A stretch of 64,000 nt of DNA from Guillardia theta CCMP2712 (lineage: Eukaryota > Protista > Cryptophyta). A program made the position numbers and the translations under genes. The DNA lies in the NCBI RefSeq assembly GCF_000315625.1, contig NW_005434637.1, forward strand, positions 246,671 through 310,670, in the 5' to 3' direction. Below are positions 1,345-64,000 of this stretch, in pieces (position 1 is the first letter of the stretch; each line of letters begins with the position of its first letter). The notes under the pieces were generated by a model. That model ran no database searches and was not told where the DNA came from. It saw only the letters and a program-made list of their open reading frames with translations.

Positions 1345-4223
1345 TCAAACTGCCGCTGCTGAGACGCAAGAATTGGGGATTATGCAAATCGTGTAGCCCA
1401 CAGGGATCAACTCAGGTGGGGTCCTGGCGATGTCCCAGTTGTTCATGTAGATATGCTTGTCCGAAGTTCCAAATCTCTGCGCAAGGGAGGCCACGGAATC
1501 ATGCGGTTCGATCTGCACATCAAGTAAGAAGCTGATCAGTGCACGAGACATAGGGATCAGTGAGGAAGTCAGAAGATTGAGGGAGGAGGCGGAAGGGAGA
1601 AGGGCGAGAAAAAAGACGAAGAAGAGCTTGTGAGGAAGGGAGTCAGACAGAACCTGGTAGAGATGGCCAATGTTGATCTCCTTGGCAGGAGGGAGGCCGA
1701 TGTCAGGGTTCAGCAGGTCTGGGTTGAAGTGCCAGACTTGGAGCCAGTTGGTTGCAAATCGCGCAGCGACTTGCACAAGAGAGTCTTCACTCTGCACGTA
1801 CCACTTGCAACGAGCGACGCTGATGAAGATGCACCCGAGGCTAGACTGAGCCGTTCGAAACGGACCGCCCACATCTTGAGCGACGAAGCATACCTCACCT
1901 TGGCAATCGTTAGATAGATAATGACTGGCTGCAAGGAATTACCTGCAAACCCGCCATACATAGAATCAGGAAACCACTGCACCAGACGAGATGTGGACTT
2001 TGACAAGGCGTCATAAGGCTCAACCACATTCGAAAGGAATGTTGCTCCCGTCAACGTCAGCCCTTGGGTGTCGAAGGAGATGGCGACCACCTCGTCCGCG
2101 TGATTGATATCTCTGAAAGTCACATTGAAGTAAAGTAATTTGCCCATGGTGGTGCTAAGATTTACATGAGGCACAAAGCTGGGTCCCGGATCTTGACGAA
2201 TGTTATAGAGGATACATCTTTGCGTCGAGGAAAGAGCAGCTGTTGGCTGTTGCCAGTATGTTCCAACGTAACAAAAAACATAATACCCTGCATATTCTGG
2301 GACCCACCGAAGGCTCCTTTGTATGATATTGATGCTCACCGTTGAAAAGTACAAGGGAGCAGTGAGAAACGGCGATGAAACGTTGTACCACGATGGGCGC
2401 ATGGAAAACGAAATGTTGGTGATAGCTGGACCATTGCCTCGCTTGAACAGAATGAAGCCCATCTCGTTAAACTTGGAAGAACATCCTGTTGTAGCCCCAG
2501 GAACAACATAGTAACCATCTGCAGTCTTTTGGTTAACTTCCGTTCTAGACTTCGTTACGAACAACTCAGTTACGGCAGGATCACTCGAGCTCCTTTTCAC
2601 CCACATAGAGACAAATAAACTTCCGTTGTTCACCAAATTGTGAGCCGCATAAGTCAAGGACGAAGATAGAGCATTGGGGTATATGTCATTCATGGTATAG
2701 CTACCGTTTTTCAGAATCGGGCGATATCCTGAATTCCAAAGATCAAGAGCCCCAGGCGCATTCAAGAATTGATAGCTTCGAGAATTCGTCTGACTTTTTG
2801 ATTCAGGATTGTCACAGACGAGGACGATATCCACAATCGCGTCAGAGCCTGTCGATGCGAGCGAAGCTCCTGGAGGCAAGCCATTCGACGGCATTCCAGC
2901 CACCTGCTGAGATTGATCCGGTCTGTAGGTTCTAGTTGCTTCAACTGTAAGATTTGAAAACACGTAGTTCAAGACGAGTGGCTGCATCTGAGGATTTTTT
3001 ACAGTGACTGGTGTCGAGATAGAGAATCCTACCCATCCATCAACATTCTGCAAGGACTTGTCCTGGCTTGACTGGTAATCCGTACCGTCATTTTGTACAG
3101 CAAACGGCTGCGGATCCGCGGGTATGTACTGCACTCTCAAATCTATCAGTGTGCTTGCATTGCACTGTGCATATTGCGTCTGTATTGCGGTACAGAGATC
3201 TACACGAACCACAAGCTGGCGAATTCCAGTACCTGCTCCAACAGTAACAAGGCCGTTGTTGTCGATGCTAGCTCCGGACATCACCGTGAATTCAGAATCA
3301 GGCAAATCCAAATCACTTGCTTTTGCCAATTGATAGGTAATGCTCACATCGGTATTATCATCAACAGGATAATTCGTATTTCCACCGGACAAAACCTTCA
3401 ATGGGACCCCACCCAAAGCAAATGCATCCTTGGCCAAAACATTGAAACTTCCACCGTTACTCTGACTCACCGTCACCACGGGGAGCGTGCGGGCAACGAG
3501 TGAGCTGTGCCTGTTGGTCAAGTCCACGTACGAGACCAATTTATACACTTTGTTGCTGTTGACTGCAAGGTCCTGACCCCTGCAGCAGCCCACAAACGAC
3601 GCCTTCCAGGGTGTGTTCCAGTACGGCTGATTCGCATCAAGGGAAGATCCCGTGGAAGCTTGGTAGCTGCATTAGGTGTGATCGTGCTGATATGACATGT
3701 AAGAAATACAAGAATCACCTGAAGCCTGTCGGATAAAAGTTGGTCTTGCCAACCGGATTGTACGGAGTGGAATACGTGTGGCGAATCATTGTAGTTCCCA
3801 TAATCCAATTCTCCGACTTCGAAAAGGCGGTGACAACAATATCAACGAAGTACTGCTTTCCATCACCTGAAACACTTGCTTTCACTTTATGGGATGGTAT
3901 CATAGGAACAGACCTGTGTAGAACAAGATTTGAGAAGTTCCTGATCCGGTGTTGGAATTGCTACCAAAGTATACACCAGTCAACCTGACTTTGTCTCCAA
4001 CCACCGGGTAATCATCACTTCTAGGATTGTTGCTTTTGCTTACAAAAACCCACTGAAAATTACGACCCCATGCTGTTACCAATTCAAAATCAACCGTGTT
4101 GGGTGCAACTCCCGTTTCGTTCACCGAGCGCCACGACAAAGAACCAAATCGATATGAGCCGGCACAGAAATCAAAGAGAGACAAGCAGAGTGCGAAAGAT
4201 AGTGCCCATGTTGCCTTCGACAT
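1345..4223 (-). CDS. large secreted protein with two C-terminal LysM domains and a MABP-like beta-prism segment
   Basis: Signal peptide MSKATWALSFALCLSLFDFCAG. Introns near 3913-3867, 3718-3667, ~1943-1900 and ~1651-1516 join the ORFs in frame. LysM-like repeats WYVQSEDSLVQVAARFATNWLQVWHFNPDL and YQIEPHDSVASLAQRFGTSDKHIYMNN...GYTICIIP. Confidence 0.8.
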
Positions 4224-4920
4224 TGCTTCGCCGCCCTCAACGCGAGGAGCCTTTTCAGTATCTCCAGTCCCACTCCACCTGCATAGAACTCAACAAACGA
4301 CACATCCAAGCAAGCGGGGTGACGCATGACTTTCACAACATAAGCAGCAAAGGGGATTAAAACTCAAAAACATTTTTAAGAACCAAGAGATGTTTAAGAA
4401 CCAAGAGATGAGAACAACACAAACCGCTGCTGCAACTTGACATCCCACACAGAGAAAGCTCAACATCTGCCACTCAAGTCCATACCACATAACCTTTTCA
4501 AGAATGCAAGCCCGACTCTCAACAACACTATCTGAACTGTTCTCAACTAAGATAGGTCTCAATATTTCTAACATGATCTCGTCTCCATCAAGTTCGCAGC
4601 TGTCCATCTCTTCCTCAACCTACTCCCTTCCCTCTTTTACGCAATGGCCATCGCGGCTGTTGAGAGCGATTAGCTCACTCCACCCCACCCTCTTCGATTG
4701 ATCGAGGAAAGTACCCGTCCTGTACAAGTACCTACCCAGTTTCCTTGATCTTTTGTGGGGACACCCACGAAATTGATAATTAAACTACCGGTACATAACC
4801 TACCCTACCCATTGTTTTACAGTTTTGATCTACAACCGATAGGTCTCATCGGTACAGGTTCCAAATGTTTTGTGTATATTTGAAAAAGAAGAGGACATAT
4901 TGAAATCAATAATCAAGTGA

Positions 4921-5400
4921 CTGACCCGGCGTCCGGCCGGGCGATCAACCGCTGCCGGCGGCGGCGCCGCCGGGCCCGGTTGAACTTCCGAACTTGAAGT
5001 TCACTCAGTGCGGCGAAGCAGCGGAAGCTGCCACGGAATCAGTCCTGAGTCCCGGAACCCCAGCCGAGCAGGAGCTGCTTAGTCTGACAATGCGGCCCTT
5101 CAGTTCACCGGGGGGCGGGGGCGGCCGCGCAGCCTCCGAGTCACCCGCCGGTGACCCGCCGTCGGACCCGGACGGACTCGGACCGGTCACCCGGCACCGG
5201 CCGGGCGGGTGACCGTAGTGGCCCGGTCCCCGAGCGGCCCGCCGCGCCGGTACGCCGTGACGGTAGCTGCCACTGACCATACACCGCCGGGCGGGTGTGA
5301 CCGTCACTGGCGTGACGGACAGTGACTCACACCGTGGCACGGTGGCCCACCGTCACTCAGGAAGTGCCGGGTGACTCTCATACTAGTCAGTGCAGGCTTC
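4921..5400. repeat. GC-rich intergenic island (dispersed repeat family member)
   Basis: Strongly GC-rich, with CCGG/GGCC/CCGTGAC motifs; shares GAACTTCCGAACT with the island at ~51875. Confidence 0.55.
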
Positions 5401-5760: not shown

Positions 5761-8243
5761 ATGGAGAGAGTAGTGGATGCTCGAACAGACGCTGCTTCCG
5801 AGCTGGTGAACGAGAACGATACGTTGCTGCAAGGAGAGCTAGAGAAGCGAGGAGGGAGTGGACATTCATTCAAGTTCAGGTGGGTAAAAGCCACAAGAAA
5901 AGAAATCTCTTACTCAGTCACTCCGAAGACACCAGCGATTACCTCGATACGATATGAAGAGATAACATGGTTAGCTGATGGGTTGAACCATTCTCGAGGG
6001 GCAGACAATGATTTGATCGTGATGCCGGCAAGGCCTCCAAAGGCAGATGATGAATCTGGTATACCAAAGTGCTCAGTTCAAGTTGTCTGGAAGAAAAAGC
6101 CTGACGAAGAGATCGACAAGAAAAGCCTGGATCTGCAGCATCTTGACTTTGCTCTGGGGACATCGAAGAATGGTTTCTTTCGGGGAAGAATCTTCGTGTT
6201 CAGAACTAAGAATGTTGACGAGCTTGAGATGTGGGTTGAAGGAATACAACGATTGTTGAGGTATCACCAGGACACAGAGATCGTGAACCTGAGCAGATTT
6301 GAAATGATTCGAAAGACTGTGAGATGGTTCTACGTGGGAGACAGATGTCAGTTCGTTCTGGCAGCAGTGATAGTCAGCAACTTCATCTGCAATATCTTTG
6401 AGGCACAGATGCACTCTGCTTCCGGCACAGACGAAGTGTTTGCCATTTTGGATGTGCTCTTCACGATTTTTTTCACGATTGAGGTTTATTGATGTTTTGT
6501 TGCATGTTATGTGTAACTGACCGTTTTCTTCAGTTACTCATAAATATGTTTTCAACTTTCTTCTGGGAATTTATCTCATCACGATGGAATTGGTTTGACA
6601 TGTGTGTTGTTCTGATCTCTCTGATCAGCGTGTTCATAAACAATCTTCCTGGTGCAAACGTGCTGCGACTGCTCCGTTGCTTTCGTGTCTTTCGACTTTT
6701 CAATCGAATCAAGAGCTTGAAAATGGTTCTCTTAGCACTGACTGCTTCTATTCCCCCTATGGTGAATGCTTTTGCGCTGGTCTGTCTTGTCATTGCTATT
6801 TATTCCATCGTTGCTGTTCAGTTTTTTAAACAGCAACAGCCCGAATTGTTTGGTGATTTCTTTACAAGTATGTTCACCATGTTTCAAGTGATGACTCTAG
6901 ACAACTGGTCTGATATTGTAAGAGCTCTTTGGCTGCAGACCAATCAAGAATTCGGTGTAGCATGCTTCTTTTGCTCCTTTCAGTTGATTGCAACCATGGT
7001 TTTGTTGAACGTTGTCATTGCTGTGCTTCTTGACAACTTTTCGGATGCTTCTAGGGAAGAAGCAATTCAAGAACAAAGTCAGTTTTCTTTCAATGCAGAT
7101 TACACTCTAGCAAGAATGGTGAATTCTATCAGCAATGCTCGCGACAGCTACGAGCTTGAGGTTCAGATTGACTCCTTGTTCGACAAGCTCTTGCAACTCA
7201 ATCGTGATAGGATAATGCAGACTTTGACTTCGACTCCTTCAGAACTCAAGAGATTGGGTTACTTTTTCAATCGCTGGAGATGCAGAGGCATAGAAAGGGT
7301 TCAGAAGAACAAATTGTCTTTCATGCAGTTTAGAAATGGATTCAAGATGATGAGGTTCATTCCCCCAATCATTATCACTCAAGACTTTTGGAAGAAAAAC
7401 GTTCAGAGTGCTGGCTTGTGCGATCGGCAAGGTCTGCTCCCCAGAAGCTCATTTCATACACTTTTGAAATGTATGCTCCGACAGCATGACAGTAGCCTGA
7501 TCAACTTTGCGATGGAGATGAACTTTCAAACTGAAAAGGATCATGCTGCACGTGTCATTTCTGCTGTTCTCGCTGTTATTTGCGATGATCCAGCAAAGGG
7601 CATTCATTTGCATCGCGCGGCTTCCGAAAACTGGACTGAAATACACAATATGCTTGATAGTCCGACGGAGACAAAATTGATGGAGACTTTATCAGCCAAA
7701 CTGAATTCCATGCATGAGCGGTTGGATAAGATAGAAACGGAGCTGAGGGAGAATACCCCTCGGAAAATGCACGCGGCAATTAAAGAGTCGATTGGTAATG
7801 GGCACACGAAGCTCAAGGCTAACGGAACTCACAACCTTGTCTCCTCCAACGGGGTGCATCTGTCACGTAGGCGGGGATCTCAAGCGACCACCGGAGTATC
7901 CCAAAAGGTCGATCGCAAGGTCAATCATAAATCGTCAGACCTGACAGAGATCAATCGTCAACTTCAACAGTCAGACCTGACAGAGATCAATCGTCAACAT
8001 CAACAGTCAGACCTGACAGAGATCAATGATCAGCGTTCATCTGTTCCCGAAGAGATAAAGCAAGAGAATGAAGTCAAACGAGTCATCGAAACCTCCCAGG
8101 TCAGCTTGGAGACACAGGATGTGCATATGAACATATCGGCGCACCCCATGCTCGACACCCCCAAGGGCCCTGTGAATCAATTCATTGATGGTCTAGTGGA
8201 AGGAATTCTCAGTATCGGCAAGTCAGTGAGAAGTTCTGCATAG
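5761..8243 (+). CDS. single-domain (6TM) voltage-gated Na+/Ca2+ channel with N-terminal PH-like domain
   Basis: Exons 5761-6483 and 6534-8243 (50-nt GT-AG intron, in frame). S3 WNWFDMCVV, S4 LRLLRCFRVFRLFNR, pore FTMFQVMTLDNWSDIVR, S6 LLNVVIAVLLDNF. PH-like helix FVFRTKNVDELEMWVEGIQRLL. Confidence 0.88.
7934..8030 (+). repeat. 36-bp in-frame tandem repeat (SDLTEINRQxQQ, about 2.7 copies) in the channel C-tail
   Basis: TCAGACCTGACAGAGATCAAT recurs three times at 36-nt spacing. Confidence 0.85.
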
Positions 8244-59129: not shown

Positions 59130-61517
59130 TGCTCTTTCAACAAACTTTCTGCGGGCAGAACTTGCTCAATCCAGCTTCCTTCTACACAATGATCGGGCCC
59201 TGTAGAGAAAGGGAGATCAGAGTGGGAAGGGAGGGAGATTTCCAACACAGACCCGCGATAATCCCTATGATCGGCGACGAGATGTTTTGGGCAAACTCGA
59301 CTTGGGTCCGGCAGCACGGGCACAGCACAAGACCTGCAAGATCGGACAGACTTTAGCGCCGTTGACAGTCATCGACATGTCTGTACCATCATTCACGACG
59401 ATCACGACGGAAGCGCATCGAGCAATGTTGGACAGACACGATCGAAAGTCCATTATCCCAGTAGATCCTCCGAGGAAACTGCGAAAGCCCCAGGCAGCGA
59501 GCTTCTGGCTCACCTTCTCAGCTGTCGTCTTGCTGTCTTCGCTGCTGATTATCATGACCATGTTTTCCTTGGAGGAGGAGCGAACTTCAGACTTGGACCC
59601 GACGACTCTGTACAGCAACATGGCGACGTCATCTTGCAAGAAAGGAGAGTCTTGCTTGCTGCTTTGTGTCTTGTCGGGGACTGCAGACACGCCGTCGTGG
59701 TCGAAAGGTTGACATTCGAGCGCTTGAGACGCCCCGTCAACGCCGTAGAATCTGCCGCACAAGATGGTGCAAAGGCCAGCGGAGAGGATCTCGAGCGAGG
59801 CTTGTTGGTCATACGAGAGGTGAATCAAAGCATGAATGCCGTGCTGTGCTGCATGAGGTTGAGAATCGAGGCAGCTCGCCACCGCAAAGCAGCAAGTCTG
59901 CACGAAACCGCTAGAGCACAACTTGGGCACGATACTCAGGTTCGCCGACATCCTCTTCGCGCCCAGAAGAAGCTGCTCCATGTTCAAGGGCTTCCCTCCG
60001 AACGACTTCGACTTTGCTGCAGCTCGCAACATCCTAACGAACACCTTGCACCAAACTGAGTTCCTCTCGATCACTCTTGAAAGAAAGCTGTTCTTCCTGT
60101 GACTGCTCAACAATGCCATCAGAGTCAGCGCCTTGCCATGAGCAGACCATCTCTTATCGTCCACAGAGCTCGGTATCGAGTCACTGTCCTTGATTCGGAG
60201 GAAGTGATCTGAGACGCGCTCTGCGCAACCCGATTGAACGAGAGAATCCGCCGCCTCAATTCTGACCGACAGACTTGCAAGGATGTGCAGGGCAGTGAAA
60301 GAGATCTCAGAGCTCTTTGAGGAGCAAGCTGCTTCTGTGATGACTGGGGAGAACTGATCTATGGGCACCTCGTCCATCGCTCCAGGTGTCGAAACTATCG
60401 AAGTCAAAGTGTGAAGGGTTTCCATCATCAGCAGCCGAATCTCAGACGGATCATCTTGCACAGGTTGGAATTTCCCTGATCTGGATGAAGTGGTATCAGC
60501 AGGATGGGATCTCGTCATGCAGAACTTGATCAGCATCATCAATGCATTCAAGCCGTTTCTGCACAAAACAATTAAGCGTGCTTGCATGTCTTTGCCTGTG
60601 CCATGGCTGCCTTCAGTGACCCACAACTGGATGCTCTTGAGGCATATGGCAATATCCTTCAGCTCATCTCGTTGAATGCACAGCTCAAGTCTCTGCAGGA
60701 GACTTTGTACATCGCGAACCTGACTTTCCGAGCATACAGCAGGGGTCGAGGCCTCTCTGCTGGATTTCACATCTTCACTGGAGAGAGGCCTTGTCGCATG
60801 GTGTGACGGGGGAGTAGAATAGATCAGTCTCTCCCTCGGGGAACTGAAAGGTTCCTGCAGATGCACGGGGGAAAGGCGTACGGAGAAGGAGAAGCGTTGA
60901 TTGATATCATTGTTCGCCACATGTCTTTCCATCGAGGCTGGCGATCGTGATGTGAAAGTGAGATTCTTGTCAGAGGGATGATCGAAGTGCGCTTCACAAT
61001 CAGAGTTGCTTGAATTGAGAGATTTTCTCGGGCTAACCTTGTTTGGTTTTCTCTTGCCTTCCTTAGTCTTCTCGGTCTTGACGGAATCCAAAATCTGGTG
61101 CAAAGCGATTCTTTTTCTATCTCTCATCAGTTCCAACGAGAGGTCAAACGTTTTCTCCTTCCTGTTCTCTTCCATGGTTCCATACCCATGCCCTGCATGT
61201 GTTCCGTTTTGGGAAGCAAATCGATGAGCCAAAATCTGTTTGTAATCTTGATCAAACTCTGACTGGAACGTGTTTCGCTGTTTGGGAGCAGATCGCGAAC
61301 GGCCAGTGAGGCGCGGGGTATTGGGTCCGTGCCTCGTGTCGTTGAAATCCAAGGACACACGAGCTTTGCCCGGTTGACTTCGGCTCCTCCTGCGCTCTTG
61401 CTTCTCATCTTCATCTGCGCTGTAACATGCTAGGCTGCTGTTCATGTTCCGAGGGGATCGCTCGCTTTGATGCATAACGTCCCTTCCTCTCCGCATCATG
61501 CTCTCAGGACCGTCCAA
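59130..61517 (-). CDS. ARM-repeat protein with C-terminal TIR-like domain
   Basis: Disordered N-terminus, helical ARM-like repeats (ALHILASLS, HALIHLSY), then VMIISS...AEKVSQKLAAWGFRSF...IARCASVVIVVND|GLVLCPCCRTQVEFAQNISSPIIGII. Confidence 0.65.
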
Positions 61518-62437
61518 GCATCCGAACTATCAGAATGCCACACGTATGCTATGCTCGAATCCGTTCTCGTCGTTCTTTCGAATGATGTTTCGGATCCTTC
61601 TCCTTACCGACCCTCTTACTGTCTTCGAGTCGCTACCTTGCTCGTCATGGAGCATCTTCAGCCTCTTCCTCTCTCCTCTCCTCCTCCCTCCCTCTCCACC
61701 TGGCGGCATCTTGGTGGCCGTGCATCAGGATCGAATGGCACTGCTGGGGTGGTCTCCAGAGTGGATTAGTACGGGTGTAATTCTCTTCAAAACCACCCCC
61801 TCCCTGCAGTACCCACCCCTGAATGCAGGTTGCCTGAATACACCTCCATTCAGTTTTTTGTTTCAATTTGAAGTTTTTTTTTCTTGTAACCGTTATATGC
61901 TTGTTGCGGCAGTGTTGCGGCAGCGGGTGGAATCTTAATTCGGGTAACGGCCTCCATATGCACTTCATGGGGGTGGTGGGGTGGTGGGGCGGAGCATGTA
62001 CCCTTCATCTCTACTATAGAACGGGGTACTTTTCCCTAAAAGAATTGAGTGTCGATTGTCGGTAGGGTAGGGTATAAAGGTAATATGAGATTACCGAGCT
62101 GGGCTGGCAGCATGGTGGTCGGGGAGGATTGTAGCGGCGGAAGAGGAGGTGAAGGAAGAGGGAGAGGTGAAACGAGTTGAAGAGAGAAGGAAGGGAACAG
62201 GAACATCTCGGCAGCAAACAGCAGAAAGCTGAAGGCAGGTGTGATGATTTTGATTGGGCGGGGAGCGTTCACTCAATACAAATGCTAAAAATCCTGCTTT
62301 TCCGAGGTACAGATTCCAGATAACAGGACAACCCTCTCTGCTGTGACCCCGTCAGATTTTTTTAATTACGAGCAGCAGCATGACTTGATTGAGGCCCTGT
62401 GGATCGTCGTTACACCCGAAGCTCCAACGAGCTGCTG

Positions 62438-64000
62438 ATGCTCGTTAGAGCTATGATAGGTCACCTCAAGAAGATTTTCATCGCGGACCAGAGCTCCATC
62501 CACGACGTGGAAGAGGAAGAGAAGAGCTCAAACAAGGCAGTCCAAGGACCCTTCCACGGTCTTGAGGGTCCCAAGAGGTGGTGGATAGCCTACCTGTGCT
62601 GGCTCGTGGGGGGGTGGGCGGGGCTTCACCGCCTGTACCTCGGGGACTATGAAGGAGCTCAGTCCATGCTCTGCTCTCTCGGCCATTGCGGTGTGGGCTG
62701 GATCTATGACGGATTCAGGGTATCCTCCATGGTGCAAGAAGCGAACCAACGGGGTGCGGGGAGCACACGGTGCCGTGCGGTGCGGCCGCTGTCGTCGTCG
62801 ACGTCGGCGCAGCATTGCAGGAACAGGGTGAGCAACACCAAGTATGGGGAGACCGTCGGGGAGATGTGCATTAAGTTTATCCCCCTGAGCCTCTACGAGC
62901 AACTTGAGAGGCATACGAACCGATACTTCCTGTTCATCGCCATCCTGCAGCTGGACCCGCATCTGACCCCAACCCATCCAGCCACAACCTGGGGCCCTCT
63001 CGCCATCATCTTCATCTTCACGGCGATAAGGGAACTGGCGGATGACTGGCAGCGGTTCCTCGCCGACAGGTCCGCCAACAGCCGGCAGTATACGGTGATG
63101 AGTGCGGCAGGGAACGAAGCCAAGGGCAACATGGACTTCAAGAAGTTGGATGCAGAGATGATATCAGTCGGCGACCTTGTGGTGATCAGGCAGGATCAAG
63201 AGATCCCGTGCGATATCATGCTCTTAGGAACGTCGCACGCGGATGGATGCTGCTTCATCGAAACCTCCAACCTTGACGGGGAAGCTGACTTCAAACTGCG
63301 CAGAACCCCTCCTCTGTCTTCGACCCAATCGCTGAAGGAGATCAAGAGCCTCGTCTCAGAGATCGACTGTATCGAGGTGCCGTACGATGCTCAGCACGAG
63401 CTGAAGGGAATGCTATGGGTCCTCAAGAGCAAAGCGGAAATGGACCTTGACGTGATGGGAAGGAGCGAAGCTCGGCACGGGTATCCCATCGGGGAGACCC
63501 AAGCTCTGCTACAAGGATCGCAGTTGAAGAACACCGAATGGGTCTGTGGGATCGCCCTGTACACAGGGAACCAGACGAGGCTCGGACGATCCCGCCGTCC
63601 TCCAGCGTGTAAGCGATCCGAGCTCGACGGCGCCATCGACAGCATCTCTGCGGTCGTGTTTGTTGGGCAGGCGATCCTTGCAGCCATCCTTGGGGGGCTG
63701 GGTAACCAATGGATGAGCATGCACGGAGAGGGAGCATGGTATCTTAGATCAGCCGTGAGCTCGGAAGGGCTCAGCCTGTATGAGTCAGCGGTGATTCCCC
63801 TGAGATTTCTCCTGCTGATGTCTACCCTCATCCCGCTCTCAATCCAAGTCACCATGGACACTTGCAAATGGCTCTACTCCATGTGGATCGGATGGGACCT
63901 CGGCATGTCTCAGTGCGATCGGGTGGGTAAGCGAGACGCTGAACGAGGAGGAGGAGGAGGCGCGACGCTGCGGAACAGCGACATCGCGGAGAACCTTGGT
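62438..64000 (+). CDS. P4-ATPase (phospholipid flippase, ALA2-like) with N-terminal TM2 domain; partial, runs off the right edge
   Basis: Open frame to the window end (absent from the ORF track): NRVSNTKY...FIPLSLYEQL...NRYFLFIAILQL, VGDLV...IPCDIMLL, IETSNLDGE, LLQGSQLKNTEW..G..YTGNQTR, IPLSIQVT, RNSDIAENLG. Confidence 0.9.
   Translation, partial: MLVRAMIGHLKKIFIADQSSIHDVEEEEKSSNKAVQGPFHGLEGPKRWWIAYLCWLVGGWAGLHRLYLGDYEGAQSMLCSLGHCGVGWIYDGFRVSSMVQEANQRGAGSTRCRAVRPLSSSTSAQHCRNRVSNTKYGETVGEMCIKFIPLSLYEQLERHTNRYFLFIAILQLDPHLTPTHPATTWGPLAIIFIFTAIRELADDWQRFLADRSANSRQYTVMSAAGNEAKGNMDFKKLDAEMISVGDLVVIRQDQEIPCDIMLLGTSHADGCCFIETSNLDGEADFKLRRTPPLSSTQSLKEIKSLVSEIDCIEVPYDAQHELKGMLWVLKSKAEMDLDVMGRSEARHGYPIGETQALLQGSQLKNTEWVCGIALYTGNQTRLGRSRRPPACKRSELDGAIDSISAVVFVGQAILAAILGGLGNQWMSMHGEGAWYLRSAVSSEGLSLYESAVIPLRFLLLMSTLIPLSIQVTMDTCKWLYSMWIGWDLGMSQCDRVGKRDAERGGGGGATLRNSDIAENLG

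What the first reader, a model, noticed from the sequence alone, without database searches (positions are those of the whole stretch)
62438..64000. In-frame fusion of a TM2 domain to a P4-ATPase flippase
Seen: one uninterrupted frame encodes KRWWIAYLCWLVGGWAGLHRLYLGDYEGAQSMLCSLGHCGVGWIYDGFRVSSMVQEAN (~62573-62746) directly before the P4-ATPase N-terminal NRVSNTKY motif. Established: K..AYLLW...G..G.HR.YLG...GW..D is the TM2 family signature, and P4-ATPases normally have a soluble N-terminus and a separate CDC50 subunit. Inference: this is an unusual architecture in which TM2 may act as a built-in accessory or trafficking module, and it hints at a function for TM2 proteins. The ORF track misses it because no stop lies in the window.
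Basis: partly seen in the sequence, partly recalled or inferred. Interest (0 to 1): 0.75.

Follow-up and report, generated by a model that had tools for sequence, protein, structure and literature searches.

The report
Flippase with built-in TM2 membrane hairpin
A cryptophyte alga (by an earlier scan note, Guillardia theta) makes a lipid-flipping pump (P4-ATPase) that carries a TM2 membrane hairpin, a domain of unknown function, at its front end; the fusion is transcribed and conserved in relatives, which ties TM2 domains to lipid flippases for the first time I could find.

Summary
One open frame holds a Pfam TM2 domain (aa 45-93, E 2e-12, above cut-off). About 19 residues later it holds the first strand and the NRVSNTKY motif of a P4-ATPase.

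The fusion is not an annotation or assembly artefact:
- Spliced transcript contigs from three studies start 285-330 nt upstream of the ATG and run unbroken through TM2 into the pump.
- A transcriptome protein of the cryptophyte Hanusia phi (85% identical) has the same architecture.
- At least nine environmental sequence clusters (45-60% identical) also have it.

Across these sequences the TM2 part is as conserved as the pump's N-domain (64% against 70%). The N-terminal tail is not (19%).

The pump is intact and most resembles plant ALA2-type (P4C) flippases. Those begin exactly where the TM2 linker ends here, so the module was added in front of a tail-less core.

CDC50 genes are present in the genome, so TM2 replacing CDC50 is unlikely. 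How TM2 acts is inferred, not shown; I favour a membrane tether, regulator or sorting module on the A-domain.

No paper describing this fusion was found. The scan had also flagged this same stretch from an overlapping window (s1-453510), and a CDC50-flippase fusion elsewhere in this genome (s1-445465).

The parts
62106..62437 (+). 5' untranslated leader of the mRNA. It holds short upstream ORFs at 62244 (14 aa), 62282 (13 aa) and 62380 (2 aa), and the in-frame stop TGA at 62390-62392.
   Evidence: Transcript contigs of three studies begin at 62106 (X2), 62133 (X3) and 62153 (X1) and are colinear with the genome. The upstream ORFs and the stop were listed.
62438..62455 (+). Start region with two in-frame ATGs, at 62438 (weak context, C at -3) and 62453 (G at -3). 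The second aligns with Met1 of the Hanusia phi protein and is the likelier start.
62456..62545 (+). Variable acidic N-terminal tail (aa 7-36), predicted cytosolic.
   Evidence: Mean identity to orthologues over aa 1-34 is only 19%. There is no hydrophobic signal-like segment.
62546..62578 (+). Conserved pre-TM2 motif GPFxGLxGPKR (aa 37-47).
   Evidence: About 72% mean identity over aa 35-47 across nine fused orthologues.
62570..62716 (+). TM2 domain (aa 45-93): helix a WWIAYLCWLVGGWAGLHRLYLG, loop DYE, helix b GAQSMLCSLGHCGVGWIYDGF.
   Evidence: Pfam PF05154 at 47.8 bits, E 1.7e-12. The six-frame family search of the genome gave 49.7 bits. Mean identity in orthologues is 64%, with W55, G58, G59, W60, A61, G62, H64, Y67, L68, G69, W88, D91 and G92 invariant. 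AF2 gives helices at 45-67, 71-79 and 82-104 at low confidence.
62717..62773 (+). Post-TM2 conserved helix end (MVxxAN), followed by a short variable linker (aa 94-112).
   Evidence: Mean identity over aa 94-125 is 39%; the variable part is only about 10-12 residues.
62774..62992 (+). Start of the P4-ATPase core: invariant R113 (RxV strand), NRVSNTKY, a clade-specific 6-residue insertion (62846-62866 region), LYEQ and TM1 (PhoLip_ATPase_N).
   Evidence: Pfam PF16209, E 2.3e-15. Plant ALA2 proteins start MKRFVY exactly at R113. All solved P4-ATPases align only from query residue 105-144 onward.
62993..64000 (+). Rest of exon 1 inside the window: TM2-TM4 of the pump and the A-domain, with DGEAD (63275-63289) and the TM4 motif IPLSIQV (63830-63850). 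Exon 1 continues to window-equivalent 64570 (DKTGTLT at 64022-64042), and further exons follow outside the window.
   Evidence: Splice joints GT..AG after L002:4570, 4727, 4830 and 5002, and the next donor at 5166. Downstream motifs TGDK and GDGANDV and parts of PhoLip_ATPase_C were found exon by exon.

Best explanation
This is a genuine, expressed and evolutionarily conserved gene fusion. An ALA2-like (P4C-type) phospholipid flippase with intact catalytic motifs carries about 112 extra residues in front of its otherwise tail-less core. These are a variable cytosolic tail, a conserved GPFxGLxGPKR motif, a TM2 hairpin and a short linker.

Shown:
- One ORF and one spliced mRNA.
- Protein-level conservation of the TM2 part in a second cryptophyte and in at least nine environmental lineages.
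- An intact pump.

Inferred:
- Both ends of the hairpin must lie on the cytosolic side, because the A-domain strand that follows 19 residues later is cytosolic. The hairpin therefore either spans the membrane twice (giving a 12-helix pump) or dips in from the cytosolic leaflet.
- It ties the first strand of the moving A-domain to the membrane next to the pump.
- It most likely acts in cis as a regulatory, stabilising or sorting module, while the pump still uses a separate CDC50 subunit.
For: Domain hits above Pfam cut-offs in one frame.

Transcript evidence:
- Spliced transcript contig X1 record 4 (4297 nt) covers L002:2153-4570 without a break and then four GT..AG introns.
- X2 and X3, from other studies, start at 2106 and 2133.

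Orthologues with the same fusion:
- Whole-library HMMER search: the top single-stretch hits cover both TM2 and the P4 N-terminus at 51-61% identity (aligned).
- Precomputed Pfam gives TM2 plus PhoLip_ATPase_N for Hanusia phi P0173 and for P0174, P0001, P0002 and P0175.
- P0173 is 85% identical over 706 aa and starts at the Met equivalent to ATG 62453.
- Metagenome contigs L022, L023 and L026 carry TM2 and P4 exons on one strand, with TM2 and NRVSNTKY in one exon.

Region-wise identity: TM2 64%, pre-motif 72%, PhoLip_N 70%, linker 39%, tail 19%.

Pump intact: DGEAD, IPLSIQV, DKTGTLT, KGADEV, TGDK and GDGANDV.

Closest relatives:
- ALA2-type flippases score 347-368 bits, against ATP8A1 261, ATP9A 172 and Neo1 144.
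- ALA2 proteins begin at the residue equivalent to R113.

Charge distribution fits N-in/C-in: KR before helix a, D/E in the loop, R after helix b.

CDC50 genes are present. Only one of about seven P4-ATPase loci in the genome has TM2.
Against: - No protein-level data: translation from ATG 62438 or 62453 is inferred from conservation, and three short upstream ORFs precede it.
- Helix b is only weakly hydrophobic (Kyte-Doolittle 19-residue mean about 0.6).
- In some orthologues (P0004, P0009, P0024) helix b is shortened or not hydrophobic, so a two-pass topology is uncertain.
- Animal TM2D proteins are annotated with the opposite orientation, loop cytosolic (PMC8714088).
- AF2 of the N-terminal 254 aa is of low confidence (pLDDT 59.7).
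- The C-terminal exons (TM7-10) were not fully mapped, and an assembly gap lies near the 3' end.
- Nothing tests what TM2 does.
Confidence: 0.62

Rival explanations
1. TM2 serves as a built-in beta-subunit substitute, so this pump folds, leaves the ER and cycles without CDC50.
For: TM2 sits at the same N-terminal position where, in a paralogue of the same genome (G000:C230), CDC50 itself appears to be spliced in frame to a P4-ATPase (earlier finding s1-445465). Both modules have two membrane segments with both ends cytosolic.
Against: TM2 has only a 3-6 residue loop and no ectodomain, whereas CDC50 acts largely through a large luminal domain that contacts the pump's luminal loops (PMC10654040). 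The nearest relatives (ALA2/P4C) associate with a beta subunit (PMC10654040). CDC50 loci are present.
Confidence: 0.1
2. TM2 is mainly an oligomerisation or sorting device. The glycine- and tryptophan-rich hairpins self-associate or bind other TM2 proteins, and so set the pump's compartment or clustering rather than its catalytic cycle.
For: N- or C-terminal regions determine the localisation of mammalian P4-ATPases (PMC7530900). The helix has small-residue motifs (GGWAG). TM2 domains often occur as tandem arrays of 3-7 copies in other eukaryotic proteins. Fly Almondex has been proposed to act as a trafficking module (PMC8714088). The genome has other stand-alone TM2 genes.
Against: No test was made. 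The short, partly conserved tether to the A-domain strand and the clade-specific insertion next to it suggest a closer coupling to the pump than a mere sorting tag would need.
Confidence: 0.22
3. The TM2 segment is not part of the functional pump. Translation starts at a downstream ATG (62666 or 62729), and the upstream frame is leader sequence or a separate small product.
For: ATG 62729 lies 30 codons before NRVSNTKY. The first ATG has a weak context, and the leader has three upstream ORFs. ALA2-type pumps work without any N-terminal tail.
Against: The frame stays open from TM2 into the pump in every orthologue. TM2 residues are conserved at 64%, with 13 invariant positions, while the tail upstream is free to vary. 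Met98 is not conserved in orthologues: Hanusia has Leu there, others have Leu or Met. Under scanning, ATG 62453 has the better context.
Confidence: 0.04
4. Assembly or gene-calling artefact that joins two neighbouring genes.
For: The assembly is a draft with gaps (N run near L002:7640-7750).
Against: The sequence is continuous, with no stop. Independent transcript contigs from three studies cover it, as do several independent metagenome contigs and a transcriptome of another species with the same junction.
Confidence: 0.01

Closest known systems
ALA2-type (P4C) phospholipid flippases of plants, Dictyostelium and some fungi
   Same: They are the best-scoring named relatives of the pump part (35-39% identity, 347-368 bits over aa 113-711). 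They share the RxV first strand, N-R-[VI]-S-N-T-K-Y, L-x-E-Q, TM1-2 and the A-domain. By family knowledge they are PS flippases that pair with a CDC50/ALIS subunit (PMC6402034, PMC10654040).
   Different: ALA2 proteins start at the residue equivalent to R113 and have no N-terminal membrane segment. The cryptophyte clade adds about 112 residues with TM2, and a 6-residue insertion after NTKY.
P5A (Spf1/ATP13A1) and P1B P-type ATPases, which have two extra N-terminal helices (Ma/Mb, MA/MB)
   Same: These are P-type pumps with an extra helical pair in front of the core M1. PMC10654040 states that P5A has two extra N-terminal TM helices and 12 in total.
   Different: Those helices are family-wide, are not TM2-domain homologues, and occur in pumps with other substrates. 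No P4-ATPase is described with them. All solved P4 structures align only from residue 105 onward.
Animal TM2D1-3 (Almondex, Amaretto, Biscotti) and DNAJC22/Wurst
   Same: They share the Pfam TM2 domain, two short helices around a conserved G-x-[DH]-R-[FL]-Y-L-G core. Their molecular function is unknown, with links to Notch trafficking, endosomes, phagocytosis and endocytosis (PMC8714088, PMC10409296). DNAJC22 was a weak hit here.
   Different: TM2D proteins are small, have a signal peptide and an ectodomain, and are annotated with the loop cytosolic, the opposite orientation to the one required here. They are not fused to any enzyme.
Natural CDC50::P4-ATPase fusion in the same genome (G000:C230)
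   Same: A two-segment membrane partner is joined to the N-terminus of a flippase in the same organism. My own reading of the splice junction agrees with earlier finding s1-445465.
   Different: The partner there is the known beta subunit with its large luminal domain. Here it is a TM2 hairpin with no known relation to flippases.

Membership tests
Pfam TM2 (PF05154) | Score above the curated gathering threshold over nearly the full 51-position model | tested here: met
   47.8 bits against a cut-off of 27.9, model positions 2-51. The genome six-frame search gave 49.7 bits.
Pfam TM2 (PF05154) | Two membrane-spanning helices joined by a short linker | tested here: inconclusive
   Helix a is moderately hydrophobic (KD19 1.08) and helix b weakly so (about 0.6). 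AF2 predicts helices but at pLDDT 61-66. Some orthologues have a truncated helix b.
P4-ATPase (phospholipid flippase) | PhoLip_ATPase_N with the N-x-[VI]-x-[TN]-x-K-Y motif, and homology to solved flippases | tested here: met
   PF16209 at 56.5 bits. ATP8A1 E 2.4e-76, and ATP11C, ATP8B1, Drs2, Dnf1, ATP9A and Neo1 are all hit.
P4-ATPase (phospholipid flippase) | P-type catalytic motifs: DKTGT, DGE(T) in the A-domain, TGD, GDGxND, KGA | tested here: met
   DKTGTLT, DGEAD and KGADEV. VTGDK and IGDGANDV in downstream exons.
P4-ATPase (phospholipid flippase) | TM4 P-I-S-L type motif (proline followed by a hydrophobic gate residue) | tested here: met
   The variant IPLSIQV aligns to IPISLLV of ATP8A1. 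Proline is kept, and the gate position is Leu instead of Ile.
P4-ATPase (phospholipid flippase) | Complete C-terminal membrane domain (TM5-10, PhoLip_ATPase_C) | tested here: inconclusive
   Only profile positions 1-68 were found exon by exon, below cut-off (16-17 bits). The six-frame search missed it. TM5/6-like exons are seen. The transcript contig has 1525 nt beyond L002:5166. Exons were not joined.
P4C (ALA2-like) subfamily | Closer to ALA2 orthologues than to P4A or P4B references | tested here: met
   347-368 bits to ALA2-type proteins, against 261 for ATP8A1, 172 for ATP9A and 144 for Neo1. No tree was built, so placement rests on scores only.
P4C (ALA2-like) subfamily | Association with a CDC50/ALIS beta subunit | not testable with these tools
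   CDC50 loci exist in the genome. Binding was not tested.
P4-ATPase flippase activity | ATP-driven lipid transport | not testable with these tools
   This needs an expression and transport assay.

The most novel reading that the evidence does not exclude
The fusion is a 'Rosetta stone': TM2 domains in general are membrane partners or regulators of P4-type lipid flippases. On that reading the animal TM2D1-3 proteins (Alzheimer-linked TM2D3, Notch trafficking, phagocytosis) and DNAJC22 would act through flippase-controlled lipid asymmetry in endosomal and plasma membranes.
Probability: 0.12. Interest if true: 0.85.

Novelty: new variant of a known kind. Interest (0 to 1): 0.58.

Why it matters
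TM2 is a widespread domain, found in bacteria, archaea and animals, with no known molecular function. Its animal members matter for Notch signalling, phagocytosis and Alzheimer risk (PMC8714088, PMC10409296).

A conserved, expressed fusion to a lipid flippase is a concrete functional lead. It suggests looking for TM2D-flippase or TM2D-CDC50 contacts and for lipid-asymmetry defects in TM2D mutants.

For P-type ATPase biology it would be the first P4 pump I know of with an extra N-terminal membrane module. It sits a few residues from the moving A-domain, and it lies next to a sister case in the same genome where CDC50 itself is fused. Together these point to a cryptophyte habit of hard-wiring flippase partners.

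Tried and rejected
- **Complex prediction** (TM2 aa 30-105 against pump aa 120-711): score 0.00, verdict 'no answer'. This is not evidence either way. The pump chain also lacked TM5-10.
- **AF2 of the first 254 aa with a 12-row alignment**: mean pLDDT 59.7. It is usable only as a weak indication of helices. I ran no fold search on it.
- **Raw RNA reads of run X19**: only 2 reads were laid, because only about 6% of the run was read. They say nothing about the transcript start; the start rests on assembled contigs.
- **Word-index protein searches**: these gave only one named fused relative (Hanusia phi). The length window (up to 1244 aa) excludes full-length orthologues of about 1300 aa, so the taxonomic range beyond Guillardia and Hanusia is open. 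The environmental contigs carry no taxonomy.
- **Stand-alone TM2 genes of the same genome** (C26, C31): they are not close copies of the fused TM2, so a recent local duplication is rejected.
- **Targeting-signal reading of the N-terminal tail:** rejected, because it is not hydrophobic and not conserved.
- **P4B (Neo1/ATP9) membership,** which I first suspected from the LYEQ motif: rejected on scores.
- **Paper searches** for TM2 with P4-ATPase, flippase or TMEM30A, and for Guillardia with P4-ATPase: nothing describes this fusion or a TM2D-flippase link.
- **Joining exons:** No full-length search, fold or tree of the joined product was made.

Full report
**What is in the sequence**

- The window is G000:C37:246671-310670. 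The genome size of 87.1 Mb in 669 contigs fits my recollection of that genome.
- From ATG 62438 (a second in-frame ATG lies at 62453) one frame runs open to the window end and on to window-equivalent 64597. An in-frame TGA at 62390-62392 closes it upstream.
- Pfam finds TM2 (PF05154) at aa 45-93 with 47.8 bits against a cut-off of 27.9 (E 1.7e-12).
- Pfam also finds PhoLip_ATPase_N (PF16209) at aa 123-185 with 56.5 bits against a cut-off of 29, then E1-E2_ATPase.

**Is it one gene product?**

- The upstream neighbour is a long ORF on the other strand (59265-61517), so the TM2 part cannot belong to it.
- Laying public runs on L002:1400-5300 (window position = L002 position + 60000) gave three lines of support:
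  - A 4297-nt contig of run X1 (depth 180) covers 2153-4570 without a break. It then skips four GT..AG introns of 51, 53, 109 and 50 nt and continues past 5166. It is spliced, so it is RNA-derived.
  - Contigs of two other studies (X2, X3) begin at 2106 and 2133 and show the same introns.
  - The mRNA therefore starts 285-330 nt upstream of the ATG and carries TM2 and the pump together.
- The leader holds three short upstream ORFs.
- The raw-read RNA run X19 was sampled too thinly to add anything.

**Is the TM2 part translated and selected?**

- A HMMER search of aa 1-175 against 1.84 billion representative proteins gave, as its best hits, single alignments spanning both TM2 and the flippase N-terminus at 51-61% identity (P0001-P0004, P0009, P0011, P0012, P0014, P0024, aligned).
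- The word-index search added a EukProt protein of Hanusia phi, another cryptophyte (P0173). It also added P0174 and P0175. All have precomputed Pfam TM2 plus PhoLip_ATPase_N.
- P0173 is 85% identical over 706 residues. It starts with the Met that aligns to ATG 62453, which is therefore the likelier start.
- The environmental members come from ENA and JGI metagenome contigs without taxonomy. Contigs L022, L023 and L026 show TM2 and NRVSNTKY in one exon, followed by further flippase exons on the same strand.
- Region by region, mean identity to the G. theta protein is:

| Region | Mean identity |
|---|---|
| N-terminal tail | 19% |
| GPFxGLxGPKR motif | 72% |
| TM2 | 64% |
| Linker | 39% |
| PhoLip_ATPase_N | 70% |
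| A-domain stretch | 46% |

- Thirteen TM2 positions are invariant.
- A non-coding leader, or a separate accidental ORF, would not behave like this.

**What kind of pump is it?**

- The catalytic motifs are present: DGEAD, IPLSIQV (a PISL variant), DKTGTLT, KGADEV, VTGDK and IGDGANDV.
- Among solved structures the best match is ATP8A1 (261 bits), then ATP11C, ATP8B1 and Drs2. ATP9A (172) and Neo1 (144) score lower. Every alignment starts at query residue 105 or later.
- Among all proteins, the best named relatives of aa 113-711 are plant 'phospholipid-transporting ATPase 2' (ALA2) orthologues, plus Dictyostelium and Dispira proteins, at 35-39% identity and 347-368 bits.
- ALA2 defines the P4C subfamily, which is related to P4B but uses a beta subunit (PMC10654040).
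- Aligned, ALA2 proteins begin MKRFVY exactly at invariant R113 of the cryptophyte protein. The TM2 module was therefore placed in front of a core that otherwise has no N-terminal tail.
- The fused clade also has a private 6-residue insertion just after NTKY.
- The genome has about seven P4-ATPase loci and only this one has TM2.
- The other TM2 genes of the genome are not close copies.
- The C-terminal exons are short and were only partly recovered, and an assembly gap lies nearby.
No full-length search, fold or tree was made.

**How it probably works (inference)**

- The strand beginning at R113 belongs to the cytosolic A-domain. The residues after helix b (aa 94-112) must therefore be cytosolic, and with an even number of passes the tail is too.
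- The charges fit this: KR before helix a, DYE in the loop, R after helix b.
- This orientation is the opposite of the one annotated for animal TM2D proteins (PMC8714088).
- Helix a is moderately hydrophobic and helix b weakly so.
- In P0004, P0009 and P0024 helix b is shortened or polar. A re-entrant hairpin in the cytosolic leaflet is therefore as plausible as a two-pass one.
- Either way, a conserved membrane element sits about 19 residues, of which only 10-12 are variable, from the first strand of the domain that rotates in every pump cycle.
- I therefore favour a cis-acting membrane tether with a regulatory, stabilising or sorting role. Known analogues are the extra N-terminal helices of P5A and P1B pumps (PMC10654040) and the localisation role of P4-ATPase termini (PMC7530900).
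- Replacement of CDC50 is unlikely, for three reasons:
  - CDC50 loci exist.
  - P4C pumps use a beta subunit.
  - TM2 has no luminal domain.
- AF2 and the complex test gave nothing usable.

**Comparison and novelty**

- Seven full-text searches found no paper that describes a TM2-flippase fusion or a TM2D-flippase link.
- The TM2 domain's function is still stated as unknown (PMC10409296).
- This is a new variant of a known kind: a P4-ATPase with an added, conserved N-terminal TM2 module. It is confined, as far as shown, to cryptophytes and unassigned environmental eukaryotes.
- Its wider value is as a functional hint for TM2 proteins. One lineage-restricted fusion is weak support for that generalisation, so I put it at about 12%.

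**Earlier notes of the scan**

- The same stretch was flagged from an overlapping window (s1-453510).
- A CDC50::P4-ATPase fusion elsewhere in this genome was reported (s1-445465). I came upon it independently, and my reading of the junction sequence agrees.

Noticed in passing
G000:C230, locus L019 (C230:26000-35000), minus strand, about 6836-934: CDC50 exons lie directly 5' of a P4-ATPase. A canonical 55-nt GT..AG intron (about L019 5210-5156) would join '...DDSEANDRR' in frame to 'EVECPPDPHKHFESNYVKTNKYT'. The flippase exon has no ATG of its own, and the CDC50 frame stops at once if the intron is kept. This looks like a natural CDC50::flippase fusion and agrees with earlier finding s1-445465. 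I did not check it with reads.
   Followed up: partly
Proteins P0005-P0050 (e.g. Lingula anatina XP_013400308.1, Mercenaria, Amphiura, Anneissia): The nearest non-fused relatives of this TM2 segment (34-41% identity) are uncharacterised proteins of marine invertebrates and of metagenomes. They carry 3-7 tandem TM2 domains and no other Pfam domain.
   Followed up: partly
window 62244-62388: Three short upstream ORFs (14, 13 and 2 codons) lie in the transcribed leader of the flippase gene. They may give translational control.
   Followed up: no
G000:C13:416000-422500 (L027), minus strand: An intron-less 1137-codon open frame encodes a Neo1/ATP9-like (P4B) flippase. This genome therefore has both P4B and P4C-like pumps, unlike plants (PMC10654040).
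   Followed up: no
L002:5770-5895 and 7069-7300; N run at about 7640-7750 (window-equivalent 65770-67750, outside the window): GGREGG/GEGRGG-coding purine-rich low-complexity repeats lie inside introns or the 3' region of the flippase gene, and an assembly gap lies close to its 3' end.
   Followed up: no
window 59265-61517, minus strand: A 750-codon open frame lies divergent from the flippase gene. The two share a roughly 600-900 bp promoter region. It was not analysed.
   Followed up: no
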